Made by a program: the position numbers and the translations under genes. A stretch of DNA of 64,000 bases, from IMG/VR virus record IMGVR_UViG_3300043446_004613, positions 62,001-126,000 of that record. One strand, written 5' to 3'. The stretch's first letter is position 1. Every line of letters begins with the position of its first letter. This document shows, piece by piece, positions 25,557 to 61,652 of the stretch. The notes beneath the pieces were generated by a model. The model made no database searches, had not been told where the DNA came from, and worked only from the letters and a program-made list of their open reading frames with translations.

Positions 25557-25570
25557 TAACTACGTAGTTA
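25557..25570. promoter_or_regulatory. palindromic bidirectional motif TAACTACGTAGTTA between divergent genes
   Basis: Perfect 14-bp palindrome made of two back-to-back TAGTTA motifs; recurs at 41661. Confidence 0.7.
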
Positions 25571-26701
25571 ATGGATATGAGCGAAGAAAACTTAGACAGC
25601 TTTGATGTTGTTGTACCGGAAATTCCATTACCGGTAGCAGCAGAAACCGCAGACATTAAAGATGAATTCGAGGGCGGTTTCAAATTCGCTTTTATTGGCA
25701 GCGGCCAAGGCGGCGGGCGACTGGCACATACTTTCTGGAAGCTCGGCTACCGTCGCGTTTGCGCCGTCAACACCGCGTCGCAGGACTTGGCAACCTTGCC
25801 GTTGCCGGAGGCCAACAAGCTGTGTCTCGGCGATGCAGGCGGCGCAGGCAAGAATCCAGCGGTGGCCAAAGCCACGTTCAAAGAGCGCAAAGAGGACGTT
25901 CTCGATTTCATGCGTCGCTCATTCGGCCCCGGACTCGATCGCGTATTTGTCTGCGTTGGTGCGGGCGGAGGAACTGGCGCGGGTACGGCAGTGCAGCTTG
26001 TAGACACAGCCGTCGAACTTCAGAAATCGCTCAAGTGCAAGAGCGACAAGGTCGGCGTCATCGTAGCGCTGCCCAAGCTGGCCGAAGGCAAGAAGGTAGC
26101 CGCTAATGCGTACAACACGCTGAACGATCTTCTGTTCCTTGTTGAAAAGGAGGTCGTATCACCGTTGATTGTGGTTGATAACGAGAAGATTGGAACACTC
26201 TATCCGAATCTCGCTGTTGATCCATTTTGGGATACATCGAATACGAGCGTGTGCTCCCTGTTCCATCTGTTCAATACGATCTGCGTCAAAAACAGCAGCT
26301 ACACCAGTTTCGATCGCGCTGACTTGCTGACGGTACTCGACAGCGGCTTAATCACTTTTGGAGCCAATCCGGTTACTTCGTACAGCAGTGAAACGGACAT
26401 CAGCTATGCTGTTCGTAACAATCTGCGTAAGAACATTCTTACCGGCGGCATTGACCTCGCTACCGGGGACATTGCAGCCGCTGTGGTTATCGGCGGTGCC
26501 GAGATCATGAACTCAATGCCGCAGGCATATATCGAGCACGCGTTTGACCAGCTGAACCGCATGCTCAAAGCAGGCAGCACTGTTCATCGCGGCATCTACA
26601 AGGGCAACAAGAATAACCTAGTCGTGTATACGATGGTAGGCGGTTTGGCGAAGCCGAAAGAGAAACTGGCTGATCTCAAGCGTGTTGGCGACCTGATTTA
26701 G
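25571..26701 (+). CDS. tubulin/FtsZ-family GTPase (phage PhuZ/TubZ-like candidate)
   Basis: GSGQGGG, AVNT, GAGGGTGAG signature loop, VDNE, SFDRAD T7-like loop; no FtsZ C-terminal tail. Confidence 0.9.
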   Translation: MDMSEENLDSFDVVVPEIPLPVAAETADIKDEFEGGFKFAFIGSGQGGGRLAHTFWKLGYRRVCAVNTASQDLATLPLPEANKLCLGDAGGAGKNPAVAKATFKERKEDVLDFMRRSFGPGLDRVFVCVGAGGGTGAGTAVQLVDTAVELQKSLKCKSDKVGVIVALPKLAEGKKVAANAYNTLNDLLFLVEKEVVSPLIVVDNEKIGTLYPNLAVDPFWDTSNTSVCSLFHLFNTICVKNSSYTSFDRADLLTVLDSGLITFGANPVTSYSSETDISYAVRNNLRKNILTGGIDLATGDIAAAVVIGGAEIMNSMPQAYIEHAFDQLNRMLKAGSTVHRGIYKGNKNNLVVYTMVGGLAKPKEKLADLKRVGDLI

Positions 26702-26712
26702 TTCTTGAGGGA

Positions 26713-27471
26713 ATGATCAGAGTCATCACTGCTGCTGACGACGTGTTTAAGCACGCCGTCATGCTTACGGTTAATGCGTCTGCCCGCGCAGGCTATACCA
26801 CTGAGGTTTATGATCTCGGTGGTTTAGGTTTTGGAAAGCCGTATCCGCGACCGGAGCAGTACAAAAACCATCGCCGATCTCATCTGTTCGGCCCATGCAA
26901 GCTGATTGATCAAAACGTTCGAGGTGTCGCGCCTTGGAAACCTGCATTGATCCGGGATGTACTGCTTACCTGTAAACCGGAAGATTACGTAGTTTGGCTT
27001 GATGCCGACGCTTGGATCATAAGGCCACTGAACGCTATCCAGACCGACGACTACGACATCGGCGTTACTGTCCGAAACGCGAACGAAACAGATCACGGGC
27101 ACGGCTTAATAAATGCCGGTGTCTTGTTTTTAAGACCAACACAAGCAGCCTTAAATTTCATTGACCGCTGGATACAGGAAATACCGCTCTCGACGGTACA
27201 GTCCGATCAGTTCACGCTAAATGATCTTCTGGAACGGGAAAACGTATTCAGATCGCGTGATGCTGTGTCTGTCGGGTATAACACGCGTTTTAAGTTTTTT
27301 CGTGCCGAACAGTTCAATTTCTACTACGCTCCAAAACCCCTGCTGCCTACGACCGCTATAGTACATTTCAAGCGTGATACACGTAAAAAGCACGCTGATT
27401 TTGAGCAGTGGATCGCTACAACTGCACCAGCATATCTCACTGCTGGCCTATCTGTTGATCGCGTGGCGTGA
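26713..27471 (+). CDS. nucleotide-diphospho-sugar glycosyltransferase (GT-A fold)
   Basis: WKPALI, VWLDAD, INAGVLF, SDQ..LN, IVHFK. Confidence 0.75.
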   Translation: MIRVITAADDVFKHAVMLTVNASARAGYTTEVYDLGGLGFGKPYPRPEQYKNHRRSHLFGPCKLIDQNVRGVAPWKPALIRDVLLTCKPEDYVVWLDADAWIIRPLNAIQTDDYDIGVTVRNANETDHGHGLINAGVLFLRPTQAALNFIDRWIQEIPLSTVQSDQFTLNDLLERENVFRSRDAVSVGYNTRFKFFRAEQFNFYYAPKPLLPTTAIVHFKRDTRKKHADFEQWIATTAPAYLTAGLSVDRVA

Positions 27472-27667
27472 CCTTAGCGCCGGGCGGATATGAGCCGACA
27501 TAGACAGGCGCACCGCTTTGCGCATAGCCGCTGCGCAGCATTGAACTGCCAAGCTTTATACCCAGCTGCGCCCAAGCATCTTCGGGATTAGAGGCCGTGA
27601 CGCCGATAACTTGTCGCTTTTCCTGATTTGTAAACGTGTAGCTGTAGTAGCGAATAAGGGCACTCAT
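27437..27667 (-). CDS. hypothetical protein (76 aa)
   Basis: ORF with CGTAGTTAA 5 nt upstream. Confidence 0.55.
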   Translation of the reverse strand: MSALIRYYSYTFTNQEKRQVIGVTASNPEDAWAQLGIKLGSSMLRSGYAQSGAPVYVGSYPPGAKVTPRDQQIGQQ

Positions 27668-27701
27668 TGCTTTAACTACGGCTCGGCGTTGTATTTAGTG
27701 C

Positions 27702-30108: not shown

Positions 30109-30136
30109 AATCTGTTCTTTATGTTAGGTGATTCAG

Positions 30137-30165
30137 AGTGTAGACAGTTACGCATTACGAATCAA
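30137..30165 (-). promoter_or_regulatory. sigma70-type promoter for ligA
   Basis: TTGATT-17 nt-TACACT. Confidence 0.5.
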
Positions 30166-30184
30166 CATTTTATTTTAATTATTT

Positions 30185-32002: not shown

Positions 32003-35000
32003 TCACTTGTCGATAATGAGCAACTTGTCCCAGTCGATGTCCTTCTTAGGAATCTTTTTCATGTTCAAGTAGTTCAAACCGACTTCACAGTCACCGCTAA
32101 ACGGAACCAGCATCCAAGACGTATCGAAGTTATTTCCGAACACATGCTTAAAAACGTCAGGAAAGTTGTTCAATACATCGGTTACGATTTCGTGGACGAT
32201 TGGAAGTTCTTCGCGGACGGCGTCGATGACCAGCGAGTCATGCACCGTTGAAACCAGAATAGATTCCAAGTTCATCTGGCGCATAAGGTCTTCGATGACA
32301 CACAGAGCCGTCAACATCATATCCGAAGCTGTTGACTGAATGAGGTGGTTACATCCAGCCCGTAAAGCTTTAGCCTGTGCTTCCTTATCCTCGCCAAGAA
32401 CTTCCTCAAACACACGCACACGGCCAAAAACGGAACAGGCAACGTGGTTGTCCATGATGAAGCGCTTGTACTCCATCAGCAGCGTCTTCAGTGAAGGGTA
32501 GGAGTCGAAAAATAGCTCGATGATATGCTGACATTCTTCAGGGCTGCGGAAAATGCCTTTCATCGCCAGCACGTTTTGTAGACCAAACGCACCGCCACCG
32601 TAGCCGGTCAAAAAGTTTACGGTCTTGCCGATGGAGCGCTTTTCATCCAGTTCCTTCGCCTCTTTGCTGTTACCCTTCTCCTGCAACGACTTCATGTAGT
32701 CCTTACTGAAGTGCTCGTAAGGTACGTCGAATATGCGACTGGTCGTAAGCGAGTGCAGATCGATGTCATCAAAATACGCTTTTACCATCGTCGGATCACC
32801 GCAGGCGGCAGCCATGAGGCGTAGTTCGATCTGCGACAAGTCCCCTTGATACATGCAGCCGCGCTTACCGAAACGGGATACGAACATGGATTTAACAGCG
32901 CCGTCGCGGGGTAGCTGTTGCAAGTTCGGGTCTTTGCACGACAGACGACCTCCGCGAGTCCCGGTTAGCAAAAAGCTGGCGTGGATACAGCTGTCAAAGC
33001 ACAGATGCGCATCTGCTGTGCGCTGCTTCTTATCCAAACCTTCGCTGAAATAGTTTTGCAGTGGCCGAACGTAGGTGCTGTAGAGCTTGAACTCTTTCCG
33101 GTAATTCATCAGTGGGCGGAGTTGCTCGTGCTCTGAGCATAGATTGTTAAGTGTGAACTTGTCTACAGCTGCGACCTCGCGCAGCTGCTCCTGCACAGCG
33201 GCGTTCAGTGCAGCCTCGTCATGGTTTAACTCCGGGCGCATTGATGCGATTGTCGCGGTTAGACTCGCGGTTGCCTCGTCAATATTTTCGCCGAGCAGCT
33301 TTCGACCCTGCTTGGTAAAGCGCTTTACAGGTAGTTTTAGGACATTGAATATCAAGTCTTTAAGCTGACTCTTGTTTTCAAGGTCTAGCTCAAAGCCTTT
33401 CTCTGTCGCCGCTTTCTCCTTGATCCACGATGCGATACGCGGGTCAACATTGGCCATGCTTGTGCGCAGTTCCTTGATGCGCTTAGGCATAGTGTCTTCC
33501 ATCATGTGCAGCGTAGCTTTATCAATGTATAGACCGCGAGCCATCATCTTCATCAAAACACTCGCAGCGGGAGACATGATCTTTTCGTAGACCCATTCGC
33601 GATTATGTGGGGCATACCAGCGAAACTTTCCGGGACGCTTTGGATCAGCTAACGGAATCTCGTAAAGGCGACTCGTTGCCAGCTTTTCAGCAATCTTCTC
33701 TCGGGCTTGATAGCACACTTCAACGTCACCCATTACGTAAGGGATCAAGTGCGTCTCGGTTTTATCAACCGGACAGTTTAGGTAGTGGCCACCTTTACCT
33801 TCTGCCGGGTGCATGCTTTCACGGTGGAGGTCGATTAGAAGCGTCATGTCTTCTTCATAACCGGCAAGGTCAGGTACCCACTCGTAAGCAAGCACCTCTA
33901 GGCCAAGGCTGCCACGGCGCTGCTGGATGGCAAACGCCATGTGCCACGTGTCGTACTTGCAGGCGTTCGCGAGCTTTACCAACCAGCTGTCGCGCTTGCG
34001 GTTGTACTGCGGATCATCCCAACCGACCAGCTTCGTTTTCCAGAAGGTGGCGTAGGTGTAAAGCATGTCGAAGGTCAAGTTATGGCCAATTAGTGTTGAC
34101 TGCGTCAGCACCTTCCAGACATCCAACTTCAGCACGTGCAGATAAGGTCGCAGCGGGCTTTCGCGCCACTCAGGGAAATCCTGCGTAGGGCCGAAATCCC
34201 ACGGAAATCCTATAGAGCGCGGCTTATTTGTAAACGGGTCTGTCCAGCGCAACATGATGCTGACAATCGCCGCATCTTTAGCCCACGGACGCACACCTGT
34301 AGTTTCCGTATCGTAGCATATAGCGAGCTTCTTACCGTTCGCCTTCAAAGCTTCGATCTGCTCGAGTAGTTCACCCAATACAGCGCTGACTTCTGCCGGG
34401 TCTTCTGTCCAGTGATACCACTTGCGTGTGTACTTTGGAGCCGGTACGCCCTGCTTTGCCATCTTCAGCGCGGCCACGATTTGCTTTTCCCAGCGAGCAC
34501 GTACACTGCGATTTTGGCGTGCGTTGATGATGCGCGGCGACTGGATAGGCACCATAGGTATGCGCCAGTCCGGTATTGGGCCGAAAAGTGGATGACCGAT
34601 GGCGTCAACATTATTAGGCAATTTGTACGATAGAGCGTACTTCGGATTTGTCAGCCAATCATCCGGCCAACCGCGAAAAGTCAGGAGGCGACCTGACCAT
34701 TCTTCGGCATTTGATTTGTGTGATAGCATGCCGAGTGCGACCGTACCGACAGGCATTATCAGCGCAGGCGGGTAGCGCATTAAGTCATCAATCGCATGAT
34801 AGCGGCACCAATTAGCACGCGGCTTCAGATCGACCATCTTTTTAAGCCAATTCGAGCAGCGCGTCATGGTAACCCAACGTACGTCGTCCAAGGTAACGCC
34901 TGTTGTAGCTTGGTGTTTACGGATTATCTGGCGAAGCACTGCCGGGCTGCCATCACCGGCAATACCGAGCGCTCCCGCCATATCGTCAGGATGGGTAACA

Positions 35001-35380
35001 CCGTCAAAAATAATCGTAATCAGTGGCTTTTTGCTGCCGCCGAAAGGCATGAAAGGGGTACGGCACTCGTGGTTGAAAAGGTCGCACTGCTTACAAAGCG
35101 GTGATTCGGCGCTGGGTACAGGTGCCTTTGGCAGCATCGGCGGATTTTGATCGTACGGCGTAATCCACTCGATCTTCTCTTTCTTCTTTCCGGTGGGAGG
35201 TGTTATCGATTTCTCTTCGCCGTAGTAGTAGATGAGCATGTCCTTGTCCATCTTGGGCAGGATCTTCAACTGAGACTGTGTTACCAGCGTCCCATCCGAT
35301 AAACGGAATAAGCGCTTTTTACTCGGTTTGCGAGGCGCAAGCGTCTCTTCTGCTTTTTGCTGTTCTGTTTCGTCTGACAT
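32003..35380 (-). CDS. polA: family A DNA polymerase with N-terminal UDG family 4-like domain and 3'-5' exonuclease
   Basis: Motifs A DLSQIELR, B RSIGKTVNF..GYG, C VHDS; ExoI YDTETTG, ExoII GHNLTFD; N-terminal CKQC...RC...C. Confidence 0.95.
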   Translation of the reverse strand: MSDETEQQKAEETLAPRKPSKKRLFRLSDGTLVTQSQLKILPKMDKDMLIYYYGEEKSITPPTGKKKEKIEWITPYDQNPPMLPKAPVPSAESPLCKQCDLFNHECRTPFMPFGGSKKPLITIIFDGVTHPDDMAGALGIAGDGSPAVLRQIIRKHQATTGVTLDDVRWVTMTRCSNWLKKMVDLKPRANWCRYHAIDDLMRYPPALIMPVGTVALGMLSHKSNAEEWSGRLLTFRGWPDDWLTNPKYALSYKLPNNVDAIGHPLFGPIPDWRIPMVPIQSPRIINARQNRSVRARWEKQIVAALKMAKQGVPAPKYTRKWYHWTEDPAEVSAVLGELLEQIEALKANGKKLAICYDTETTGVRPWAKDAAIVSIMLRWTDPFTNKPRSIGFPWDFGPTQDFPEWRESPLRPYLHVLKLDVWKVLTQSTLIGHNLTFDMLYTYATFWKTKLVGWDDPQYNRKRDSWLVKLANACKYDTWHMAFAIQQRRGSLGLEVLAYEWVPDLAGYEEDMTLLIDLHRESMHPAEGKGGHYLNCPVDKTETHLIPYVMGDVEVCYQAREKIAEKLATSRLYEIPLADPKRPGKFRWYAPHNREWVYEKIMSPAASVLMKMMARGLYIDKATLHMMEDTMPKRIKELRTSMANVDPRIASWIKEKAATEKGFELDLENKSQLKDLIFNVLKLPVKRFTKQGRKLLGENIDEATASLTATIASMRPELNHDEAALNAAVQEQLREVAAVDKFTLNNLCSEHEQLRPLMNYRKEFKLYSTYVRPLQNYFSEGLDKKQRTADAHLCFDSCIHASFLLTGTRGGRLSCKDPNLQQLPRDGAVKSMFVSRFGKRGCMYQGDLSQIELRLMAAACGDPTMVKAYFDDIDLHSLTTSRIFDVPYEHFSKDYMKSLQEKGNSKEAKELDEKRSIGKTVNFLTGYGGGAFGLQNVLAMKGIFRSPEECQHIIELFFDSYPSLKTLLMEYKRFIMDNHVACSVFGRVRVFEEVLGEDKEAQAKALRAGCNHLIQSTASDMMLTALCVIEDLMRQMNLESILVSTVHDSLVIDAVREELPIVHEIVTDVLNNFPDVFKHVFGNNFDTSWMLVPFSGDCEVGLNYLNMKKIPKKDIDWDKLLIIDK

Positions 35381-35410
35381 CGAATCAAAAGAACGGTGTT
35401 CTTAAAAAAT

Positions 35411-36481
35411 ATGGAACGTGAATCACAAAGTATACCGCTACCATGCTTCGGCATGGAGCATAATAGCAGCGATCCGCAGTGTTTAAGCTGTAAGCATGAA
35501 GCCGATTGCCGCATATTCATGGGTGCTCGCGCAGATAAAGTGACGCTGGATCAGGTAAAGTTCGACTTGATCTCAGACAAGTACCCAAAAGAAATATTTA
35601 ATGTTGACGACCCTGACAAGGTGCGACTGCAAACACTATACTGTAATTGTTACGCTACGGTATTTGACGGAGTAGTCCCCGATAAAAACGACAATGCTGA
35701 GCGCTTTAGTGCAAAGATATTAGCCAACGCCAACGCTGCTGATTGTTCACTTCGCATGTTCATGCTGTCAAACATGATAGCTCACGAGACACACGAAAAA
35801 CAGGTTATCAAGCATACGGAGAAACTGCGAGCGTCACGCTTTACGGCACGTTCGCTCACAAGCGCGTACGCCATAAAACGGGCGCAGATGTATCAACAGA
35901 TGTGCCGTGACCGCTTTGGCGTATTCAGTGTTAAAAGCTTGGCGGCATTGTCGGATGATAAGGAAACCATGACCGACACTGAACAGCTGATGCTGCAAAA
36001 TGAAGTCATGGCCGGTACGTGGATGGTGCGCCACAAGATATTTAACAGCGGCCCGAGCGAAAGACTGATGTTTGACACCCTTGAATTCCAACTGAGCCAT
36101 GAATGGTTGGCACTGGAATCATCTTACACGCGCTACGTGCTCACGCCGATGCGCCTCGGCGAGCTTAAAAGCACCAAGGTACAGGAGTATCGGCGCAAAG
36201 AAGTACTCGACCTTATCGGTTTTTTGAAGCGTAACCCGAGCAAAGGCCGCTGGTATTGGACGACGCGTCAGGCTATCATGGCAAAAGCTGTGACGCAGGT
36301 GCTCGCAAAATTTAATCTGCAACCGTGCGATTTCATGTATAGTCGCGAACCTGTCACAGACGTGATGAGTTTTTGGCGCACGCTGGGCCTGACAGTCCGG
36401 CACTACCACTGCCTGTTGTACCTGAACGGCGAAAACAATTTATTTACGCCGCGTCACCTTCGCTGGGAACACCGTTCTTAA
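35411..36481 (+). CDS. hypothetical protein with N-terminal Cys cluster, replication-associated
   Basis: PCFG...DPQCLSCKHEADC; directly upstream of helicase. Confidence 0.7.
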   Translation: MERESQSIPLPCFGMEHNSSDPQCLSCKHEADCRIFMGARADKVTLDQVKFDLISDKYPKEIFNVDDPDKVRLQTLYCNCYATVFDGVVPDKNDNAERFSAKILANANAADCSLRMFMLSNMIAHETHEKQVIKHTEKLRASRFTARSLTSAYAIKRAQMYQQMCRDRFGVFSVKSLAALSDDKETMTDTEQLMLQNEVMAGTWMVRHKIFNSGPSERLMFDTLEFQLSHEWLALESSYTRYVLTPMRLGELKSTKVQEYRRKEVLDLIGFLKRNPSKGRWYWTTRQAIMAKAVTQVLAKFNLQPCDFMYSREPVTDVMSFWRTLGLTVRHYHCLLYLNGENNLFTPRHLRWEHRS

Positions 36482-36488
36482 CACCGCT

Positions 36489-37928
36489 ATGTCACGCTGG
36501 GAAACCTACAACTTCACGAACGACTTTCAGGACATGATCCTCGCGTGCCTTATCCGGCACCCGGAAGAATTTTATGCGTTCGGCGAAATCATCAAACCGG
36601 AATTCTTCACCGGATCAATAGCCACCGAAGCGGTATTCAATCTGATGCAGTATCGGACTGAGTACGGCAAGGTGCCTAACTTTACGGTACTGGCCAACTA
36701 CGCCTTTCACCGCTCGGCCACCGTTAACATCGATCACGCCAAGGAACTTTTCGACTACATCGAGAAACTGGCCAGCATTGAAACATCGGAGCGCAAGTAC
36801 ATCGTCAACTCGACGGTAAAATTTGCGAAGGAGCGGGCTATCTATGACGCGATCCGCAAGATTCACGCAGCCCAGACAGAAGGTAAACCGTTGGATGTCG
36901 TCAAAGTCATGTCCGATGCGCAGGCCGTCGGCGAGAACATGAACGATTACGGCCTGTCGCTGGCCCACGACACCGACAAGATCATCGATACGGTCACCCA
37001 GAAGAGCTACGGCGTCATGACGGGCTACGCGGAATTCGACAAGCTCTGGAAAACCGGCTGGGCACCCGGCTGGCTGATCGTACCGCTGGCTCCGCCTAAG
37101 CGCTACAAGACCACGTTTTCGATCAATCTGGCGCTTAATATCGTCACCAATCAGGACGCGGATGTGCTGTATTACGCCTGCGAAATCTCGCAGGAACTGG
37201 CAGGCATGCGTGCGCTTTGTAATGTCACGGGATGGAGTACCGATGCTTTCTACGAAAGCCCGGAAAAGGGCAAGCTTACGGCCAAGAAAGCTGTTGATGG
37301 AAAACTCTGGGGTAACATCGTCTTCAAAAGCTATCCGTCCAAAAGTGCATCGATCAGTCAGATCAAAGCCCATGCCAAGCACCTGATTGAAACACACTCG
37401 TTGAACGTCAGAGCGATCATCATCGACTACGCAGAAACGGTTAAGGCAGACAAGGTCGATAAAGACATGCCTGACTGGCGTCAGCAAGCTGACATCTACA
37501 CGCAGGCGCGTGCGATGGGGTCTGAACTTGGATGCTGCGTCATCATGCCGGATCGCTGCAATAAAGACACGGTGGGCCGTGATGTGCCGAGCATGAAGTC
37601 GTTCCAAGGTGCGTTTGAGAAAGCCGGTATTGTCGACATCGCTATCGGTCTGTGCGCCAGCGACAGCGAACTGAAGCAAAACCGGATGCGCTATTTTGTG
37701 TTCCTCAACCGTCACGGAGAAGCCTTGAAGCACTACGAGGGCAGCATCGATCCTGAACGTATGCAGATGTCCGTCGGGAGCGAGATCGAGTACAATCCAG
37801 ACGAAGAAGAAAACCAAAGCCGTGGCGGTGGTAGCGGCCATTCCCGCAGCGGTTTACCTAAAAAGCGCACAAGCGCAGCGTCTCGGCAAGCGGCACACGA
37901 AGCGGCGATGACTCAAGCAGACGGATAA
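36489..37928 (+). CDS. DnaB/gp41-like replicative helicase
   Basis: RecA-like SF4 layout: APPKRYKT (variant Walker A), YYACE, IIIDY Walker B, VFLNRHG. Confidence 0.85.
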   Translation: MSRWETYNFTNDFQDMILACLIRHPEEFYAFGEIIKPEFFTGSIATEAVFNLMQYRTEYGKVPNFTVLANYAFHRSATVNIDHAKELFDYIEKLASIETSERKYIVNSTVKFAKERAIYDAIRKIHAAQTEGKPLDVVKVMSDAQAVGENMNDYGLSLAHDTDKIIDTVTQKSYGVMTGYAEFDKLWKTGWAPGWLIVPLAPPKRYKTTFSINLALNIVTNQDADVLYYACEISQELAGMRALCNVTGWSTDAFYESPEKGKLTAKKAVDGKLWGNIVFKSYPSKSASISQIKAHAKHLIETHSLNVRAIIIDYAETVKADKVDKDMPDWRQQADIYTQARAMGSELGCCVIMPDRCNKDTVGRDVPSMKSFQGAFEKAGIVDIAIGLCASDSELKQNRMRYFVFLNRHGEALKHYEGSIDPERMQMSVGSEIEYNPDEEENQSRGGGSGHSRSGLPKKRTSAASRQAAHEAAMTQADG

Positions 37929-37934: not shown

Positions 37935-37963
37935 TTGACTGTATACATTTGTGTGCGTACAGT
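37935..37963 (+). promoter_or_regulatory. sigma70-type promoter for the tRNA/ncRNA/tmRNA cluster
   Basis: TTGACT-17 nt-TACAGT ending 5 nt before the tRNA. Confidence 0.8.
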
Positions 37964-37968: not shown

Positions 37969-38045
37969 CGCGGGGTGGAGCAGCCCGGTAGCTCGTCTGG
38001 CTCATAACCAGAAGGTCGTTGGTTCAAATCCAACCTCCGCAACCA
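37969..38045 (+). tRNA. tRNA-fMet (CAT), initiator type
   Basis: Full cloverleaf, C1:A72 mismatch, anticodon loop CTCATAA, encoded CCA. Confidence 0.95.
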
Positions 38046-38234: not shown

Positions 38235-38652
38235 GGGCGCGTACTGGTTTCGACTTTGATCGTAGCGGTGACGCCGACATGCCGAGGATGATGGTTGGCC
38301 TCGTAAAACAAACCGTCAAAAGTTAAATGCTGAAGAAGCTGAACTGAACAGCCTCCTCGCGGAAGCCGAAAGCATTTTCAACAATGCTGACGAAGTTCTC
38401 GCGAACGCTGAAGCTGTGGCGGCCTAACGGCCACCACCCGTTTACCGATCGATGCCTGCTGAATCGAGTAAACGCCATTAGCAGGACAGTGTGGATGCCG
38501 AGCAACGTCGGCGTTGGCCCGTGCCAGCCTATGGCGCAACCGGCAGGGTTTTCAGTTGTCGCTCTGATCCTGCCGCACAAAAGCGAAGAAGCATGTGAAT
38601 GGTGCAGTGTTACGGACATAGGACAGGGGTTCAACTCCCCTCGCGTCCACCA
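38235..38652 (+). ncRNA. ssrA: transfer-messenger RNA (tmRNA)
   Basis: 5' GGGCGCGTACTGGTTTCGAC; 3' GGGGTTCAACTCCCCTCGCGTCCACCA; G3-U wobble; pk1 CGAGG/CCTCGTAAA; tag ORF 38329-38427 ending AVAA*. Confidence 0.95.
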
Positions 38653-40503: not shown

Positions 40504-40692
40504 ATGGACGCTGCTGTAAACAACCAGCCGTGCAACTGCGAACTATGCCAGCCAAACTGGCATTTAGGTCGCGACGGTGAGTTTGAGCGTGCCCCGGAGA
40601 CGGTCGAAAAGAATTCGACCGCGTTTACCCCGGAGCACTTGCTTGCTCATTTTCGTCGGATCGAAGCAGAGTTTGAGTTTGTCATTGGCTGA
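40504..40692 (+). CDS. small hypothetical protein
   Basis: MDAAVNNQPCNCELC... Confidence 0.5.
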   Translation: MDAAVNNQPCNCELCQPNWHLGRDGEFERAPETVEKNSTAFTPEHLLAHFRRIEAEFEFVIG

Positions 40693-41599
40693 CCGGAGGC
40701 TTGCAAAAGCCTGTAAAAGCCTGTGGAAGCGCAGGCTTAGCAGGACGCGTCACCGCCGTTTTCTTCGACAGAATCACACCCGCCTTCTCAAGTGAAGCTG
40801 CGTTTGAATAGTAGATCAGCAGCGTGCAGAGTTCATTCTCGCGCTCGAACATAGTCTCGCTCACCTCGCTTTTAACTGATGTGCCCCAGCCGGTACCAAG
40901 GCTGAAATCCGGCACGCTGACGCTGTTGCACATAATACGGCCTTCGCTTTTGTTCGGGGTCATGCGCATTACATTTCCAGAATAGAGCGTAGAGTCACCT
41001 GCTACACTTGAGTCGGCAGGTGTATTGAAAGTCGTATACGTGGGCTGGCACGTATAGTCCACCATCCAGATCGGCGTGCCGGGCCATGCTGGTTTAGCGG
41101 GCCATGTCGGTGGCGGAGGATAGTGCCAGTGGTGATGGTGCTCCTCCACGATGGTCTGCTGCTGCTGCTTTTTGAAAGCTTCCAGTATCTTATTCGCTTT
41201 GGGTTTTTCGCTGATAAACTTCACACCGATTACGCCACAATTATGCACGTCACCTGAAGCTGATTTGGCATAAGCTTTCTCCTTATTTTCAAAGACGAAG
41301 CGGCTGGCCTCCTTCAAACTGGTGCGCCAGCCGTCCACTTCCACGGTACTGTACGCCGGGACAACGTAGCCACGAGCTTCCGGCGCACAGGGCTGGCCAT
41401 CGACGACGTTTACACCATCGATGCTGACAACCGCCAAGACGCGCTGGGCGCTGTTGTTGGTCAGCTTTACCGTGTAGGGTTGACCCTGACGCCCTTCAAC
41501 GAAGGTCAGGCCGTTCAGGCCGTATTCAGGAATGTTTACTGTGCCGGTGCCTTTGGAACGAGGCACGGCTACGGATACTTCAAACAGGTCATGTTTCAT
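40682..41599 (-). CDS. conserved hypothetical protein (NNSAQRVLAVVSIDG family)
   Basis: EGRQGQPY, VVSIDGVNV, DGWRTS, GVIGV motifs; start set at MKHD after AAAGGT. Confidence 0.7.
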   Translation of the reverse strand: MKHDLFEVSVAVPRSKGTGTVNIPEYGLNGLTFVEGRQGQPYTVKLTNNSAQRVLAVVSIDGVNVVDGQPCAPEARGYVVPAYSTVEVDGWRTSLKEASRFVFENKEKAYAKSASGDVHNCGVIGVKFISEKPKANKILEAFKKQQQQTIVEEHHHHWHYPPPPTWPAKPAWPGTPIWMVDYTCQPTYTTFNTPADSSVAGDSTLYSGNVMRMTPNKSEGRIMCNSVSVPDFSLGTGWGTSVKSEVSETMFERENELCTLLIYYSNAASLEKAGVILSKKTAVTRPAKPALPQAFTGFCKPPVSQ

Positions 41600-41660: not shown

Positions 41661-41676
41661 TTAACTACGTAGTTAA
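41661..41676. promoter_or_regulatory. palindromic bidirectional motif TTAACTACGTAGTTAA
   Basis: Perfect 16-bp palindrome between divergent genes; core identical to 25557-25570. Confidence 0.7.
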
Positions 41677-41684
41677 GAACAGAA

Positions 41685-45546: not shown

Positions 45547-46321
45547 TTGAAAAATGTGCCCGGACAGTTTTGCGGATGTTATTTGCCAGCGTACTGGCTC
45601 TTTTGTCATCATTTTTCGGTGTAGCCTCAATGAAACCTTTTATCTGCTTGAACGATGCGCTAGGCACGTGCGCGGCGCACAGTGTGCCTAGACCCATCGT
45701 TCGATCGCAGTTATCGAGTGTCAGCATCACAGGTGTTCCTACTGCCACACACGGTAAGGCGACGTGAAGCCGAGAGGTTATTACGCAGCGTGCGGCAGCG
45801 TAACGGCGTAAACGTTTCAATGCCTGCCATTCGCGGCGACCAACAGGTGCGTTAGGATCGACTTCGACGTCGGCGTAGACTAGCGGCAGACCGGCACAGG
45901 GCGGAATGTCCACCGCCAGCACTTCTTCAGTTTTAGGCACATCAGGTCGATTTAAGGTCAGTGTCACGCAGCCAGCAAAGTAAGCTTCGATACCGCAGGC
46001 TTCAAAAATGGCAGCGGTTGATGTATCACGCGTATACACCGGTTTTCCGTAGCTATTCCAGTAATCACGGTGTTTATCGACAAGCTCACGTTTAGCGATG
46101 TGCACGCCGACAAACAGCGGATTATAGTTGGGATGCGGCGGCCAGTCCCATGCGTTGTGCTTGTACCATCCTGCAACAACGACGTTTGTGCCGGGTGGCA
46201 CGCAGTATCCGAGGTGCTCGCGATCGACTTCCAAGTCGACGCCGGGCATCATGTTGCGCACGGCAAGTGCCTGCATATCGTCGCCGTTGTTCGTAGTTGA
46301 GCAAACAATTAACGCGTTCAT
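45533..46321 (-). CDS. polysaccharide pyruvyl transferase-family protein
   Basis: NNGDDMQ, RD..T, FAGCVTLTL, ITSRLHVALPC.A.GTP. Confidence 0.8.
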   Translation of the reverse strand: MNALIVCSTTNNGDDMQALAVRNMMPGVDLEVDREHLGYCVPPGTNVVVAGWYKHNAWDWPPHPNYNPLFVGVHIAKRELVDKHRDYWNSYGKPVYTRDTSTAAIFEACGIEAYFAGCVTLTLNRPDVPKTEEVLAVDIPPCAGLPLVYADVEVDPNAPVGRREWQALKRLRRYAAARCVITSRLHVALPCVAVGTPVMLTLDNCDRTMGLGTLCAAHVPSASFKQIKGFIEATPKNDDKRASTLANNIRKTVRAHFSTNRP

Positions 46322-46336
46322 GCTAGAAAGAACAAT

Positions 46337-51485: not shown

Positions 51486-53003
51486 TTATTCAAAGGTTTC
51501 TTTGCTGTGCTGTTCAATCAATGCGATAAGCTCAGCCAGCGGAGTATTATCGCGGGGATACCACGTCTTTTGTTTACCCGTCAGCTTCTTTTTAAGCTCA
51601 TCGCTGGGTTCGCAAAAACGAAGTTTCATCGGAGCTTCACTGTCGAGACAGAACAGAAAACAACGTTTACGCTCCGCCCCTACGTAGTGATACCAAAACT
51701 GACGACCTTGGCGTTCAGCACGGTTAAATGTCTCATCGAGGTGACTGATGATTTCTGCCTCATCGTTGCTGGTAATCCGCTGACTGGGTTCGTTGGTAGG
51801 CCGGGGCAGGTAGGCAGGCGTGCGCTGCTGGCGGGCACCCAGCAGCTTAGGGCTGATTGCCATCTTTGATAGCCCAAGATTTGCGGCTTCGACAGAGCAG
51901 GAGTGACGCAAGTCACAGGTGTTGCATTGGCGAGCGTTCTTGGAGTACAGGATGCCATAGCAGGCGAGTTTTCCGTTTCCGATCGAACGCGGAACCTTGG
52001 CGTTAACCTCAGTCAACATCTCGGCAACTTGTGGCGACACCTTGTCAAATTGATCACGGGCCGCCATCGTGAGCATGCGGCGTACGACCATACCGTCAAG
52101 GTCAGTTGGAATCTGTAGTCCGAAGACAAGTTTAAGCTGTGCGATGATTGCGTTTTGACGGGCTTCGCCGTCGTGTTGTTCTTGAGTTACCATACGATGC
52201 GCTAGAGTTTTGTTACGTATTGATAGAACAGCTTCTGAAAATAGTTCGGTCGAAATTCCGACAGCTTCCGCCATGTGCGTGAATTTTATTTTTACCGTCA
52301 CCTTTCCCTTGTTGCCTTTGCGCATCGCGTCCAATTCGGCATAGCAGCGTGCGTGCGCACTAGGGCTAATTAGTTCGTGAAAAACAAGCTTCTCTACAGG
52401 CGTAAGTTGGAAAGCAAACTCAGCCGCTGTTTGGCTAAATCCCCAATCAATGTCGTTTTCGTCGCATCCACTGTCTACGTCGTGCATGTCCGGCACTTGC
52501 AGTCCCAAATCAGGGTCGTCAAGTGATAGGTCAACGTTCTTGTGATACTCTGGCGTTTCCTCGCTGTCATGCGCAGCTTTAGGCGCGTCTAGTTTTTGCT
52601 GTTGACGCGGCGGCGGTTTTTGACCAGTGCGCTTTTCCGTAAAGCGGTATTTCTGAACACGGCTTTTGGTGTTGTTGTTTACACTTGTCTTGAAAAAGGC
52701 AAAAAACGAGTGACGAGTCGGACACTTATCGCCGCCCATGATGCCCTTGCTGATAAGTTTGCTGAGCACAAGGTTGCCTTCACCCATCAGTTCGTCAAAC
52801 TGAAGGTGCGGCGTAGTCTCGTCGCGGTATTGGTTAGCCACAGTGGCGATGACACGCTGTAGATCAGGCATCATCTCTTCCAACACCGGAGGTCTAAGCT
52901 TCGGGTCTTTGAAGATTAGGAATAAACGTTGACGCTTTGGGCGCAGTGCGCCAAGGATGTCACTCGTTAGCCGAATCTTCGTTGAAAATGCTGTGCTCGC
53001 CAT
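51486..53003 (-). CDS. sigma-factor-like protein with C-terminal Zn-binding extension
   Basis: Region 2-like LQRVIATVANQY...FDELMGEGNLVL...FFAFFK; HTH-like MAEAVGIS; CYG...CNTC...C. Confidence 0.55.
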   Translation of the reverse strand: MASTAFSTKIRLTSDILGALRPKRQRLFLIFKDPKLRPPVLEEMMPDLQRVIATVANQYRDETTPHLQFDELMGEGNLVLSKLISKGIMGGDKCPTRHSFFAFFKTSVNNNTKSRVQKYRFTEKRTGQKPPPRQQQKLDAPKAAHDSEETPEYHKNVDLSLDDPDLGLQVPDMHDVDSGCDENDIDWGFSQTAAEFAFQLTPVEKLVFHELISPSAHARCYAELDAMRKGNKGKVTVKIKFTHMAEAVGISTELFSEAVLSIRNKTLAHRMVTQEQHDGEARQNAIIAQLKLVFGLQIPTDLDGMVVRRMLTMAARDQFDKVSPQVAEMLTEVNAKVPRSIGNGKLACYGILYSKNARQCNTCDLRHSCSVEAANLGLSKMAISPKLLGARQQRTPAYLPRPTNEPSQRITSNDEAEIISHLDETFNRAERQGRQFWYHYVGAERKRCFLFCLDSEAPMKLRFCEPSDELKKKLTGKQKTWYPRDNTPLAELIALIEQHSKETFE

Positions 53004-53970
53004 AACGCCGTGGGTCGATAGTCTCGATCATCTCGTTGTACGTTTCTTGTGCTGAACGTACAGTTTTCTTGTGTTTGCGGGCGACCTCTGCGATCGAATC
53101 AGGGTCTAAATCTGTCTTGTCGATGTCACGCATCAACAAGTAATCAGAATGGATTTTTGACAGCTGTTGGATGGTAGGAAACTTCATCCGTTTGCCTCCG
53201 AACAGCACGCACAGCTTTTTAGCAACTTCAAACCCGAACTCATCTACAATATCGGGCAGATACGTGTAGCTTTGAGAAGCCAGCACAAGATCGTATTCTG
53301 TAAACGGGACGTAAGTTTGTTTATAGAAGGCTTGGCGCAAATTCACGATTGACCAGTCGTAAAAGAATTTGGATAAGTCGAAACTGATACCGTAGGCATA
53401 AGCTGCGCTGCGAATTGCGTCCTGCTTATCGTGCTCGTCGTCTATGATACACTGGATCAAGAAGCGGATAGCGCCAATCTCCTGTGGATCGCCCCATCGA
53501 CAGTTTAGCTCTCTAAGCTTGTTGTGCGTTTCCTGTACGGCATCGTGCTTGTCGACTTCGTGATCATCAACGCCGTAAAACTTTTCAAGGTTATCGCTGG
53601 TGACGTGGAATCGACGCCGGTACTGATTTACTTTCTGTAGTTCAGAACGAAAAGCGTTTTTAGCGCATTTGCTAAACCAAGAAAACAACTTGCCCTTTTT
53701 AGGCTGCCACGCTGCCAGCCACTTGATGACTTTTTCCTGTGCAGCGCTGACCAGTTGTGGAAGATCGACCGTGTAATGAAAATCTTCAAACTGCGCTAAA
53801 CGCTCAAACATCGCCGAGGAGCCGACGACAATGTTTTCAAGCACGAGCATCGCATCTTTGTGGCGACCAGCCGCGTTCAGCTGCTTCCACTGGATAGCCA
53901 GCGGCGTCAGTTGACTTGCCGGAAATATATGCTCTCCGTCAGCGGGTGTTGCTGGATTCTTCTTTGGCAT
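52960..53970 (-). CDS. sigma region 2-like domain fused to Mor-like activator domain
   Basis: WQPKKGKLFSWFSKCAKNAF; LPDIVDEFGFEVAKKLCVLFGG.RMKFP; C-terminal HTH. Confidence 0.6.
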   Translation of the reverse strand: MPKKNPATPADGEHIFPASQLTPLAIQWKQLNAAGRHKDAMLVLENIVVGSSAMFERLAQFEDFHYTVDLPQLVSAAQEKVIKWLAAWQPKKGKLFSWFSKCAKNAFRSELQKVNQYRRRFHVTSDNLEKFYGVDDHEVDKHDAVQETHNKLRELNCRWGDPQEIGAIRFLIQCIIDDEHDKQDAIRSAAYAYGISFDLSKFFYDWSIVNLRQAFYKQTYVPFTEYDLVLASQSYTYLPDIVDEFGFEVAKKLCVLFGGKRMKFPTIQQLSKIHSDYLLMRDIDKTDLDPDSIAEVARKHKKTVRSAQETYNEMIETIDPRRYGEHSIFNEDSANE

Positions 53971-58343: not shown

Positions 58344-58369
58344 AATACTTTTTCTGGTCTTGTTTTTGT

Positions 58370-60069: not shown

Positions 60070-60090
60070 GCGTTGTAAAAGAACAGGGTT

Positions 60091-61626
60091 TTAATTTTTT
60101 GTCGTACCAAGATACGGACGTACAGATGCAGGCATTTCTGCCAGTTCATTTTCCTTCCAAGCACGCACTTTTGGCCAAACTTGCCATTTTGTAAACATGT
60201 GTGCGTTCTGCATGCCCGGTTTTATGTTAGGCAGCTTATCCTTGATCCAGCCTTCAAAGTCATAGTCTGGATCGTCATAGTGGCCGCCACGACGGTGTTT
60301 TTTGACGGTTTCTTCCATATTACGGCGTGTACCGGTGAAATGGTAAATCATTGGGCGGAAGACAACTGTGGGGGGTGTAAAAGGGCTGCGACAAGCCTTA
60401 AAACGCATGCCCGACCCGATATAAACGACCGCCGTATCGGTTGCACCGTCAACAGGAAATCCCGGTAAACCGATGACAGGGATCATGCGCACGCTGACGC
60501 TTTGACGACCTTGTTCGACGTAAGCTTTGATTACTTTAAGCGTACCACGCATCCAAAGTTCATCGCCATCGACAATAAGGATATGCTCATAACCCAGCGA
60601 ACGAATCCAATCCAAGCTGGCATTACGCAGGCGGGTTTCTACGTCGATACGGCTGCTTCCCTCCGTAGTGTAGGAGTCAACATTATATTTTGAATAATGC
60701 ACTGTCTGACCGGCGTCTTTGAGCGCTTTGACAGCTTTTTGCACATCATCAACATTCTCTTGTTCAACCGGTTCACCTGACCAGTACTTATCGGGCTGGC
60801 AGAAACAGAAATCGTTAACACCCTCTTCAACAAGGCGTTGGCAAACGTCAAGCAGGCACAGGTCATCCTTTGTAACCTGCAAGTAGGCGACATACTTATC
60901 GTTTTTGTTATTTTTTGTTGACGCCTCTGATTTGACTGCTTTAGGGCCATCATCCAGAGGGAAACCGGCTGCACGGCGAAAGTTAAACAGCATCTCGCCT
61001 GTATTCCAACGTTCTTGCGACGCATGGATGAGATCGTGGCCATCGCGTGGGCGCTTGCCGCAGTCCGGGTGTAGGTGCTCAAACAATAGATGATTAGCGT
61101 CGATAACCACGCCGTCGCGAACAGCTACCTCGCCAAATTCCGTATCGTTGAACATGGACGGATATTTCGGGTAAAATAGATAACCGAAACGCTCATAGCG
61201 TTTACGCGTCAGGATTGAGAGTACAAAGATATTGTGGACGTAGCCGTCTTCGACTTTGACCACGTACTCCCCATCAATCCAATTAACAGGCTTGAGCGAA
61301 AGAAGTAACTCATCCCAGTTGTTTGGCGGCACAAAATCGTCGGCTACTGCAATGAGTACTTTACCTGTAGACACTTCGGCGGAAGCGTTCCAACCTGCGA
61401 CACAGGTTTTAGGGCCGTTGTTTACAGCTATTTTGACATTCAAGTTTTCTTCTGCCAGAGCCTTGGCTACGTCAAGGCAGGCACTATTTCCAGCATCGAT
61501 GCCCAAGCACCATTCGATAGTTTCAGGGTTTTTGGCACGGGTATTCCATAAATTAACGACACGGGCCATGATTTGAGGCCGGACACTGGTGAAGCACAGA
61601 GAAAATATAGGTGTAGATTTATTCAT
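60091..61626 (-). CDS. glycosyltransferase with two GT2-like domains
   Basis: VADDF and IVDGDE DxD motifs; HLHP; YHF. Confidence 0.75.
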   Translation of the reverse strand: MNKSTPIFSLCFTSVRPQIMARVVNLWNTRAKNPETIEWCLGIDAGNSACLDVAKALAEENLNVKIAVNNGPKTCVAGWNASAEVSTGKVLIAVADDFVPPNNWDELLLSLKPVNWIDGEYVVKVEDGYVHNIFVLSILTRKRYERFGYLFYPKYPSMFNDTEFGEVAVRDGVVIDANHLLFEHLHPDCGKRPRDGHDLIHASQERWNTGEMLFNFRRAAGFPLDDGPKAVKSEASTKNNKNDKYVAYLQVTKDDLCLLDVCQRLVEEGVNDFCFCQPDKYWSGEPVEQENVDDVQKAVKALKDAGQTVHYSKYNVDSYTTEGSSRIDVETRLRNASLDWIRSLGYEHILIVDGDELWMRGTLKVIKAYVEQGRQSVSVRMIPVIGLPGFPVDGATDTAVVYIGSGMRFKACRSPFTPPTVVFRPMIYHFTGTRRNMEETVKKHRRGGHYDDPDYDFEGWIKDKLPNIKPGMQNAHMFTKWQVWPKVRAWKENELAEMPASVRPYLGTTKN

Positions 61627-61652
61627 AGTCTGTTCTGTAGAACAGAAAACTT

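What the first reader, a model, noticed from the sequence alone, without database searches (positions are those of the whole stretch)
25557..61645. Divergent gene pairs share palindromic back-to-back copies of the motifs
Seen: TAACTACGTAGTTA (25557-70), TTAACTACGTAGTTAA (41661-76), AAGAAC-GGT-GTTCTT (35389-35403, polA versus helicase operon), CTGTTCT-GT-AGAACAG (61630-45) and the mixed pair CTAAGAAC-C-GTATTTAT (6978-94). The first four are same-class pairs. Inference: ultra-compact bidirectional promoters, or binding sites for a dimeric factor.
Basis: partly seen in the sequence, partly recalled or inferred. Interest (0 to 1): 0.6.

Follow-up and report, generated by a model that had tools for sequence, protein, structure and literature searches.

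The report
Back-to-back phage promoter motifs
The palindromes are real, but each is two separate 7-base gene-start signals, most likely phage middle and late promoters, pushed against each other where two genes diverge across only 14 to 34 bases in an uncultivated T4-like jumbo phage.

Summary
All five sites exist as written. The window lies in a 211-kb freshwater jumbo-phage contig of the T4 superfamily.

**Chance.** Palindrome length alone is not unusual: 13 perfect palindromes of 14 bp or more, against about 16 expected. What is non-random is their building blocks.

**The motifs.**
- GTANTTA (mostly GTAGTTA) and (C)TGTTCT(T/A) lie 4-9 nt upstream of start codons on the coding strand. That holds for 36 of 47 GTAGTTA copies, against 3% for random 7-mers.
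- They precede 65% of genes that head a divergent cluster, 24% of internal genes and 6% of genes overlapping their upstream neighbour.
- They split by function. GTAGTTA precedes baseplate, portal, adaptor, sheath and tubulin genes. GTTCT precedes PolA, two helicases, RusA and SbcCD.
- Nothing else is conserved upstream, and no Shine-Dalgarno signal exists.
- The phage encodes a conserved T4 gp55-like sigma domain fused to a Mor/C-like HTH domain.

**The pairs.** At 12 of 31 divergent junctions both genes carry a motif, as independence predicts (about 13). Copy-to-copy spacing varies from crossed or overlapping, through 0, 1, 3, 4, 5 and 11 nt, to several hundred nt. Each copy keeps its distance to its own start. 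Same-class pairs are not enriched.

**Verdict.** These are compact divergent promoter pairs giving leaderless or near-leaderless mRNAs, not dimer sites. No RNA data exist, so transcription start sites are inferred.

The parts
25557..25563 (-). GTAGTTA copy (reads TAACTAC on +) 4 nt upstream of the start of gene 25142-25552(-)
25564..25570 (+). GTAGTTA copy 6 nt upstream of the tubulin/TubZ-like gene 25577-26701(+). It abuts the minus-strand copy, and the two together form the 14-bp palindrome.
   Evidence: The start codon is supported by N-terminal alignment to 48 homologues.
41662..41668 (-). GTAGTTA copy pointing at gene 40682-41599(-), but 60 nt from its ATG. An AAAGG Shine-Dalgarno-like stretch lies in between. 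Preceded on the minus strand by CTGTTCTTA (41674-41682).
41669..41675 (+). GTAGTTA copy 9 nt upstream of gene 41685-42224(+)
35388..35394 (-). GTTCTTT copy (reads AAAGAAC on +) 7 nt upstream of the family-A DNA polymerase gene 32003-35380(-)
35398..35404 (+). GTTCTTA copy 6 nt upstream of gene 35411-36481(+). The next gene, DnaB-like helicase 36489-37928, has its own GTTCTTA at 36474-36480.
61632..61638 (+). GTTCTGT copy 14 nt upstream of ORF 61653-61925(+). Crossed arrangement: it lies on the far side of its partner and overlaps it by 2 bp.
61637..61643 (-). GTTCTAC copy (reads GTAGAAC on +) 10 nt upstream of the glycosyltransferase-like gene 60091-61626(-). The start codon is confirmed by a 55%-identical orthologue aligned from residue 1.
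6979..6985 (-). GTTCTTA copy (reads TAAGAAC on +) 7 nt upstream of the RusA-like resolvase gene 6414-6971(-)
6987..6993 (+). GTATTTA copy (a GTANTTA variant) 9 nt upstream of gene 7003-8247(+)
27673..27697 (.).
46327..46333 (-). GTTCTTT copy 5 nt upstream of 45533-46321(-), inside a 15-nt gap to the divergent gene 46337(+), which has no copy of its own
16568..16574 (-). GTTCTTT copy 7 nt upstream of the DNA helicase gene 14914-16560(-)
52960..53970 (-). Candidate trans-acting factor. A 336-aa protein with an N-terminal sigma region-2-like (T4 gp55-like) domain and a C-terminal Mor/Mu-C-like HTH. It lies in a minus-strand cluster headed by GTTCT-type motifs.

Best explanation
The palindromes are a by-product. 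Each is two independent, oppositely oriented copies of short phage-specific promoter elements, and each copy sits 4-9 nt upstream of its own start codon.

Two classes exist:
- GTANTTA (mainly GTAGTTA) precedes virion-structure genes. It is most likely the late promoter, read by host RNA polymerase carrying the phage's gp55-like sigma.
- (C)TGTTCT(T/A) precedes DNA replication and recombination genes. It is most likely a middle class.

A third set, TTGAC-N15-18-TATACA with AT-rich upstream tracts, looks like host-sigma early promoters.

The elements abut the start codons, so transcripts would be leaderless or carry leaders of only a few nucleotides. Where two clusters diverge, the intergenic DNA shrinks to 14-34 bp. 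The two elements then abut, overlap or cross, and this sometimes gives a perfect palindrome.

Shown here: motif positions, their orientation, the class/function split, enrichment at cluster heads, variable copy-to-copy spacing, and the presence of the sigma-like gene.

Inferred: that the elements act in transcription, which factor reads which class, and where transcription starts.
For: 1. Position and strand. 36/47 GTAGTTA copies, and 53/75 GTANTTA copies overall, lie just upstream of a same-strand start, against 2.9% for random 7-mers.

2. Operon position. The motif precedes 40/62 genes that head a divergent cluster and 52/215 internal genes (Fisher p = 1e-8). It precedes only 6/96 genes that overlap their upstream neighbour. 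Most of the 22 motif-less heads, by my reading of their upstream sequences, have either a TTGAC-type promoter or a motif copy 12-64 nt upstream.

3. Class tracks function.
- GTAGTTA: baseplate wedge, head-tail adaptor, portal, fibre-like protein, tail sheath, tubulin.
- GTTCT: PolA, DnaB, helicase, RusA, SbcC, SbcD.

4. No other conserved element. No position is conserved from -70 to the GTAGTTA motif, and there is no Shine-Dalgarno signal before any gene class. At 14-34-nt divergent gaps the motifs are therefore the only candidate promoter elements.

5. Spacing is one-sided. There is a hard lower bound that is also the mode: 4 nt for GTANTTA (25 genes) and 5 nt for GTTCT (14 genes). A tail runs to 9-10 nt, with rarer copies at 12-64 nt. 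A fixed start site gives this shape; an optimal ribosome-site distance does not. All 25 spacer-4 genes have a pyrimidine at -1 and a purine as the first base of the start codon.

6. Independence of the two copies. Both genes carry a motif at 12/31 junctions, against 12.9 expected. Copy-to-copy spacings are crossed, 0, 1, 1, 3, 4, 5, 11, 25, 46, 55 and 459 nt. Same-class pairs number 7/12, against 6 expected.

7. A sigma-like factor. The protein from 52960-53970(-) gives a model whose top Foldseek hits are all sigma factors. VIA-align gives Z 11.1, rmsd 3.4 A over 122 residues to chain F of the T4 late-transcription complex 7D7D. Its C-terminus matches Mu activator C with Z 6.2. PHROG 234 'late sigma transcription factor' scores E 0.003, and PHROG 836 / Pfam Mor score E 1e-4 to 1e-3. 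It has 293 homologues at 57-76% identity. No phage RNA polymerase was found.

8. Relatives.
- The closest ones (GC about 0.5) keep the same motifs at the same spacing, including mixed back-to-back pairs.
- AT-rich relatives instead carry AGTGTAAT, either 7-13 nt from the ATG with no Shine-Dalgarno, or 16-23 nt away with AAGGA in between. That is the behaviour of a promoter, not a ribosome site.
- In GC-0.57 relatives CGTTCTTA lies 10-22 nt upstream.

9. Precedent. A -10 motif 6-7 bp before about one third of ORFs drives leaderless mRNAs in Deinococcus (PMC12340547). Bacterial bidirectional promoters have divergent start sites 10, 18 or 23 bp apart around shared -10 elements (PMC12825309).
Against: - There is no transcript evidence. 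Only DNA runs of one freshwater study hold the sequence.
- The motif sits exactly where a Shine-Dalgarno sequence would sit.
- With the canonical geometry of a -10 element (start site 6-7 nt after it), the 47 genes with spacers of 4-5 nt would start transcription inside the start codon. A shorter, unprecedented motif-to-start distance has to be assumed.
- 9 of the 15 spacer-4 GTAGTTA genes begin with GTG, which is a poor leaderless start in E. coli.
- The sigma-like protein has only weak sequence-level hits. Pfam Sigma70_r2 does not match anywhere in the genome, and a profile search of PDB sequences finds nothing.
- Which factor reads the GTTCT class is unknown.
- The 41662-41668 minus-strand copy is 60 nt from its gene, yet abuts its partner exactly as at 25557. 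Compaction alone does not explain that.
- The host is unknown (one search was inconclusive).
- Gene starts are my own calls.
Confidence: 0.65

Rival explanations
1. The motifs act in the mRNA as non-Shine-Dalgarno translation-initiation or translational-control signals. The reader would be a protein or rRNA segment of a host that does not use Shine-Dalgarno pairing. Promoters would then lie further upstream, and the palindromes would be two such signals back to back.
For: - The motifs sit at -11 to -5, the position of a ribosome-binding site, and no Shine-Dalgarno signal exists anywhere in the genome.
- In AT-rich relatives the orthologous tubulin gene has an AAGGA Shine-Dalgarno at that position.
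- The motifs are rare before genes that overlap their predecessor, which could rely on translational coupling.
- The geometry problem of the promoter model for spacers of 4-5 nt disappears.
Against: - Motif class follows gene function (structural versus DNA metabolism), which a general ribosome signal should not do.
- The motif is 5.7-fold enriched (odds ratio) at heads of divergent clusters.
- At 14-34-nt divergent gaps every promoter would have to lie inside the partner's coding sequence, yet nothing is conserved there.
- 186 genes manage with neither a motif nor a Shine-Dalgarno sequence.
- Copies at 12-64 nt upstream of otherwise motif-less head genes are too far away for a ribosome site.
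- The spacing distribution is one-sided.
- The two middle bases of the 7-mer differ between the variants (AG, TC, AT, AC, AA), which argues against pairing with one rRNA stretch.
Confidence: 0.17
2. The palindromic sites, above all the GTTCT/AGAAC ones, are operators for a dimeric phage regulator that controls both divergent genes together. One of the small sigma-4/HTH proteins could be that regulator. This could hold in addition to any promoter role.
For: - Tight GTTCT-N1-2-AGAAC occurs 3 times, all in divergent gaps, against about 0.4 expected (observed counts; the expectation is my own arithmetic from them).
- The inverted repeat at 61630 is also a perfect 12-bp palindrome at the orthologous junction of relative L137.
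- The two GTAGTTA/GTAGTTA close pairs both abut with zero spacing, including 41661, where compaction does not force it.
- The phage encodes at least three small HTH proteins with sigma region-4-like motifs.
Against: - Most copies are solitary and show no conserved second half-site.
- AGAAC..GTTCT pairs within 30 nt are not enriched (7 against 6.3).
- Half-site spacing ranges from crossed to hundreds of nt, and the two orientations differ in arrangement.
- In relative L136 the two halves of the 61630-type repeat are 27 nt apart.
- The 25557 palindrome is not conserved. Relatives have an imperfect left copy 5 nt away, no divergent partner, or a GTTCT-type motif instead.
- Mixed-class pairs are as frequent as chance predicts.
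Confidence: 0.13
3. The palindromes are chance inverted repeats without function.
For: Perfect palindromes of 14 bp or more are not in excess (13 against 15.7 expected). Inverted repeats with 6-bp arms are common by chance.
Against: - The same 14-mer occurs twice.
- All the sites are built from 7-mers with an extreme association with start codons.
- The motif system is conserved in related phages.
Confidence: 0.02

Closest known systems
T4 late transcription (gp55 sigma, TATAAATA -10-only late promoters)
   Same: - The phage clade belongs to the T4 superfamily: relatives carry Gp23, the prohead protease, gp13 and a RecA/UvsX-like protein beside the sigma gene.
- It encodes a gp55-like sigma region-2 domain.
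- The candidate late promoter is a single short element with no -35 box, placed before structural genes.
   Different: - The motif is GTAGTTA, not TATAAATA.
- It abuts the start codon, whereas T4 late mRNAs have Shine-Dalgarno-bearing leaders (my own knowledge).
- The sigma-like domain is fused to a Mor/C-like HTH domain.
- The gp33 and gp45 partners were not looked for.
-10 elements adjacent to ORFs giving leaderless mRNAs (Deinococcus-Thermus, PMC12340547; Thermus phage phiYS40 middle and late genes, from my own knowledge)
   Same: - About one third of the genes carry a short promoter-like motif a few bases before the start codon, with no Shine-Dalgarno sequence (93/279 here).
- The motif occupies the place of a ribosome-binding site.
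   Different: - The sequences are not TANNNT.
- There are at least two classes, with different gene sets.
- The modal distance is 4-5 nt rather than 6-7 nt.
- Transcription start sites are unproven here.
Bacterial bidirectional promoters (Warman et al. 2021, as cited in PMC12825309)
   Same: Divergent transcription would start from one short, pseudo-symmetrical stretch. Predicted start sites would lie roughly 13-34 bp apart, with both elements between them. The crossed pairs (61630, and the 14-nt gap at genome 29053-29066) resemble a shared -10 region.
   Different: There, the symmetry comes from a single -10 hexamer that reads alike on both strands. Here there are two distinct oriented 7-mers, their mutual spacing is free, and they can belong to different classes.
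Late promoters of jumbo phages AR9 and phiKZ (AACA-N6-TA/G; TATG) (PMC5312081)
   Same: Very short phage-specific consensus elements lie close to the start site, in front of a large share of the genes of a jumbo phage.
   Different: Those promoters are read by phage multisubunit polymerases, and AR9 5' UTRs are 26-491 nt long. No phage polymerase was found here.

Membership tests
T4-type late promoter system | Phage-encoded gp55-family sigma (region 2 only) | tested here: met
   The model of 52960-53970(-) aligns to 7d7d_F with Z 11.1, rmsd 3.4 A over 122 aa. Many sigma region-2 structures score Z 8-10. All top Foldseek hits are sigma factors. PHROG 234 scores E 0.003. Sequence-level support is weak. 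That chain F is gp55 comes from my own knowledge.
T4-type late promoter system | Promoter consensus TATAAATA | tested here: not met
   The consensus here is GTAGTTA(A/G). Only the T-A..T-A skeleton could be aligned.
T4-type late promoter system | No -35 element; located before late (structural) genes | tested here: met
   No position from -70 to -1 relative to the motif carries information. Baseplate, portal, adaptor, sheath and fibre-like genes carry the motif.
T4-type late promoter system | Co-activator gp33 and sliding clamp gp45 | not tested
   Not searched for.
Leaderless -10-adjacent-ORF expression | Promoter element a fixed few bases before the start codon, with no Shine-Dalgarno sequence | tested here: met
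   The spacer is 4-9 nt and its mode sits at the lower bound. No Shine-Dalgarno signal is present.
Leaderless -10-adjacent-ORF expression | Primary 5' end at or next to the start codon | not testable with these tools
   No RNA run holds the sequence.
Bidirectional promoter (shared symmetrical -10) | Divergent start sites about 10, 18 or 23 bp apart around one shared element | not testable with these tools
   Start sites are unknown. The gaps between divergent start codons are 14-34 nt at 11 junctions.
Operator of a dimeric DNA-binding protein | Two half-sites at a fixed spacing, with symmetry present at most sites | tested here: not met
   Spacings are crossed, 0, 1, 1, 3, 4, 5, 11, 25, 46, 55 and 459 nt. 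Solitary copies show no partner half-site. One exception remains open: tight GTTCT-N1-2-AGAAC occurs 3 times against about 0.4 expected (counts; the expectation is my own arithmetic).
Operator of a dimeric DNA-binding protein | The palindrome is conserved at orthologous junctions | tested here: inconclusive
   25557: not conserved. 61630: a perfect palindrome in L137, with the halves 27 nt apart in L136.
Shine-Dalgarno-type ribosome-binding site | The same signal before genes of all functional classes and operon positions | tested here: not met
   Class follows function. 65% of cluster heads carry a motif, against 6% of overlapping genes.
Shine-Dalgarno-type ribosome-binding site | Complementarity to the 3' end of the host 16S rRNA | not testable with these tools
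   The host is unknown. The motif is not purine-rich, and the two middle bases of the 7-mer differ between its variants.

The most novel reading that the evidence does not exclude
A widespread, uncultivated clade of T4-superfamily jumbo phages (200-245 kb) expresses about a third of its genes as leaderless or near-leaderless mRNAs. The promoters are 7-bp elements that abut the start codons. A gp55-like sigma fused to a Mor/C-type DNA-binding domain reads the late class. The phage also carries its own initiator-type tRNA and tmRNA. Divergent gene pairs then share promoter regions as short as 14 bp.
Probability: 0.4. Interest if true: 0.65.

Novelty: new variant of a known kind. Interest (0 to 1): 0.45.

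Why it matters
If the reading is right, this clade gives a clean natural example of minimal promoters. One 7-bp element with no -35 box and no leader would drive each gene. Temporal classes could be read straight from the sequence, and two promoters could be packed into 14-34 bp.

This would help in three ways:
- It would improve gene-start and operon annotation of uncultivated jumbo phages.
- It would point to a new architecture in the gp55 family (sigma region 2 plus a Mor/C-like HTH).
- It would offer compact bidirectional parts for synthetic biology.

The palindromes themselves are a geometric consequence and not a new kind of element.

Tried and rejected
- **RNA evidence.** The one sequencing-run search found only two DNA runs of one freshwater study. 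No reads were laid and start sites could not be mapped.
- **Named relatives.** There was no nucleotide match in the phage collection. Protein matches were only distant (PolA 24% to SPO1-like phages; tubulin 22% to Bacillus phage G).
- **Related loci.** Searches with the 356-aa PolA neighbour, the 305-aa gene and the PolA N-terminus found nothing in viral contigs. The PolA junction was reached only through two relatives' records, and the N-terminal alignment there was imprecise.
- **Phage polymerase and sigma.** Pfam models for the T7-type polymerase, Rpb1 domain 2, Rpb2 domain 6 and Sigma70_r2 gave no match in the genome. The T7-type model rang in none of the control genomes, so that blank says little. 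A scan for catalytic-loop-like D.D[GIA]D strings found nothing resembling a polymerase active site.
- **Sequence search of PDB** with the sigma-like protein, alone and as a profile, found nothing useful.
- **Host.** Ligase relatives are 30-40% identical across many phyla, with many Verrucomicrobiales. This is inconclusive.
- **GTATTTA, GTACTTA and GTAATTA genes.** PHROGs gave no annotation for ten of them, so a separate function for that sub-class could not be tested.
- **Word statistics.** Maximal-order Markov k-mer over-representation did not single out the motifs. Positional enrichment did.
- **Sense-strand AGAAC as a motif of its own.** 15 genes have it within 16 nt. I rejected this as a separate class, because most cases are the partner gene's GTTCT copy and the remaining 6 are close to the chance number of about 3.5, which is my own estimate. 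The 61630 junction and its orthologues remain ambiguous.
- **GTAGT-type motifs in the GC-0.57 relatives.** They are too frequent there to be informative.

Full report
**What the window is.** The window is bases 62001-126000 of a 211,113-bp IMG/VR virus record, estimated 93% complete. It was assembled from a freshwater metagenome and has no nucleotide match among deposited phages.
- The window encodes a family-A DNA polymerase, a DnaB-like helicase, an NAD-dependent ligase and a tubulin/TubZ-like protein.
- Elsewhere the genome encodes a tail sheath and an SbcC-like protein.
- Relatives carry Gp23, the T4 prohead protease, gp13 and a RecA/UvsX-like protein. This is therefore an uncultivated jumbo myovirus of the T4 superfamily.
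- Gene calls are my own, from a codon-usage caller (279 genes). They are imperfect.

**The observation.** Each lies between two divergent start codons.
- The gaps are only 24 nt (25552/25577), 30 nt (35380/35411), 26 nt (61626/61653) and 31 nt (6971/7003).
- The exception is 41661, where the minus-strand gene starts 60 nt away.
- Length alone is not remarkable. The genome has 13 perfect palindromes of 14 bp or more, against a mean of 15.7 in Markov simulations.

**What the halves are.** GTAGTTA occurs 47 times in the genome, and 36 copies lie within 10 nt upstream of a same-strand start codon.
- The same holds for GTATTTA (8/15), GTAATTA (5/6), GTACTTA (4/7) and GTTCTTA (15/32). Random 7-mers score 2.9%.
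- Logos show two families. One is GTANTTA, with nothing conserved upstream. The other is (C)TGTTCT(T/A).
- 93 of 279 genes carry one of these motifs.
- The 186 genes without a motif show no upstream signal at all, and no Shine-Dalgarno sequence.
- A third set of sites, TTGAC-N15-18-(TG)TATACA behind AT-rich tracts, looks like host-type early promoters.

**Why I read the motifs as promoters.**
1. Operon position. They precede 40/62 heads of divergent clusters and 52/215 internal genes (p = 1e-8), but only 6/96 genes that overlap their predecessor. Most heads without a proximal motif have, by my reading, a TTGAC-type promoter or a motif copy 12-64 nt upstream.
2. Function. GTAGTTA precedes baseplate wedge, adaptor, portal, fibre-like, sheath and tubulin genes. 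GTTCT precedes PolA, DnaB, a second helicase, RusA, SbcC and SbcD.
3. Necessity. Divergent genes must each have a promoter, and in 14-34-nt gaps these motifs are the only conserved sequence.
4. Spacing. The spacer has a hard lower bound that is also its mode (4 nt for GTANTTA, 5 nt for GTTCT), with a decaying tail. A fixed transcription start with leaders of 0-5 nt gives this pattern. All 25 spacer-4 genes have a pyrimidine at -1 before the purine of ATG or GTG.
5. A sigma-like factor. The phage encodes a conserved 336-aa protein (52960-53970, minus strand).
   - Its N-terminal domain models as sigma region 2. The match to chain F of the T4 late-transcription complex 7D7D has Z 11.1, and all top Foldseek hits are sigma factors.
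   - Its C-terminus is Mor/Mu-C-like.
   - The gene sits in a cluster headed by GTTCT motifs, as expected for a middle gene that makes the late sigma.
   - No phage RNA polymerase was detected.
6. Relatives.
   - The closest ones keep the same motifs and spacing.
   - AT-rich relatives instead use AGTGTAAT, placed either 7-13 nt from the ATG without a Shine-Dalgarno sequence, or 16-23 nt away with AAGGA in between.
   - Published precedent exists for -10 elements adjacent to ORFs that give leaderless mRNAs (PMC12340547).

**Why the palindromes are by-products.**
- Of 31 divergent junctions, 12 have a motif for both genes, against 12.9 expected under independence.
- The distance between the two copies is crossed or overlapping, 0, 1, 1, 3, 4, 5, 11, 25, 46, 55 or 459 nt. 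Each copy keeps 4-9 nt to its own start.
- Same-class pairs (7/12) match expectation (6).
- At the orthologous tubulin junction, relatives have an imperfect left copy 5 nt away, no divergent partner, or a GTTCT-type motif instead.
- At 61630 and at the 14-nt gap at genome 29053-29066, the two copies have crossed. Each lies beyond its partner, and this resembles the shared -10 region of bacterial bidirectional promoters (PMC12825309).

**What remains open.**
- No RNA data exist, so no reads were laid.
- Canonical -10 geometry would put the start site inside the start codon for spacers of 4-5 nt. A shorter motif-to-start distance must be assumed.
- 9 of the 15 spacer-4 GTAGTTA genes start with GTG.
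- The minus-strand copy at 41662-41668 abuts its partner although its gene is 60 nt away. On the minus strand it follows a CTGTTCTTA, so that gene may have tandem middle and late promoters and a leader bearing a Shine-Dalgarno-like AAAGG.
- Tight GTTCT-N1-2-AGAAC repeats occur 3 times against about 0.4 expected (counts; the expectation is my own arithmetic). The 61630 repeat is a perfect 12-bp palindrome in relative L137, but its halves are 27 nt apart in L136. An additional role as an operator for the GTTCT class is therefore not excluded.
- The host is unknown.

**Verdict.** Of the two interpretations, compact divergent promoters is the better one and is partly supported. The dimer-site reading is not supported for GTAGTTA and is weak for GTTCT. 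The system is a new variant of known kinds: T4-type late promoters, leaderless expression from -10 elements adjacent to ORFs, and bidirectional promoters.

Noticed in passing
window 37969-38045 (+): The single tRNA (anticodon CAT) has a C1 x A72 mismatch at the top of the acceptor stem. That mismatch is the hallmark of bacterial initiator tRNA (my own knowledge). A phage-borne initiator tRNA would fit a genome that depends on leaderless or Shine-Dalgarno-less initiation.
   Followed up: partly
window 38235-38652 (+): A genuine phage-encoded tmRNA (Rfam RF00023, 127.5 bits, full length). ARAGORN predicts an unusually long tag peptide ending in AEAVAA. The ORF callers also place a spurious ORF on it.
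   Followed up: partly
window 37935-37963; genome-wide about 60 sites: The 8-bp palindrome TGTATACA is very frequent (TGTATAC counted 123 times on both strands). It usually sits at the -10 position of TTGAC-type promoters with AT-rich upstream tracts, only 2-10 nt before the ATG. Before the tRNA it lies directly after TTGAC, inside the spacer. It could be the early -10 element or an operator for early shut-off.
   Followed up: partly
window 52960-53970 (-): A 336-aa fusion of a gp55-like sigma region-2 domain and a Mor/Mu-C-like HTH domain. It has 293 homologues at 57-76% identity, many on contigs of 200-245 kb. One homologue is named a sigma-24 family protein by JGI.
   Followed up: yes
genome 29067-29537 (+), 203921-204472 (+), 205709-206167 (-) (outside the window: L003, L010): Three small proteins with sigma region-4/HTH_38-type helix-turn-helix motifs. 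The first lies in a 14-nt divergent gap where a GTTCTAA and an ATAGTTA element overlap. They are candidate middle-gene regulators.
   Followed up: partly
loci L016-L058 (relatives with GC 0.38-0.41): AT-rich relatives of the tubulin locus use a different upstream motif, (A)AGTGTAAT. It lies at 7-13 nt from the ATG without a Shine-Dalgarno sequence, or at 16-23 nt with AAGGA in between. The promoter motif has therefore changed within the family.
   Followed up: partly
window 25577-26701 (+): A tubulin/TubZ-like (PhuZ-type) gene sits in a T4-superfamily phage that shows no detectable phage RNA polymerase. It has 48 homologous loci in IMG/VR at 48-68% identity.
   Followed up: partly
whole genome: No Shine-Dalgarno signal precedes any gene class. 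About 70% of all genes have a pyrimidine at -1 and about half have A at +4. The host's mode of initiation is probably not Shine-Dalgarno-based, and the host is unidentified.
   Followed up: partly
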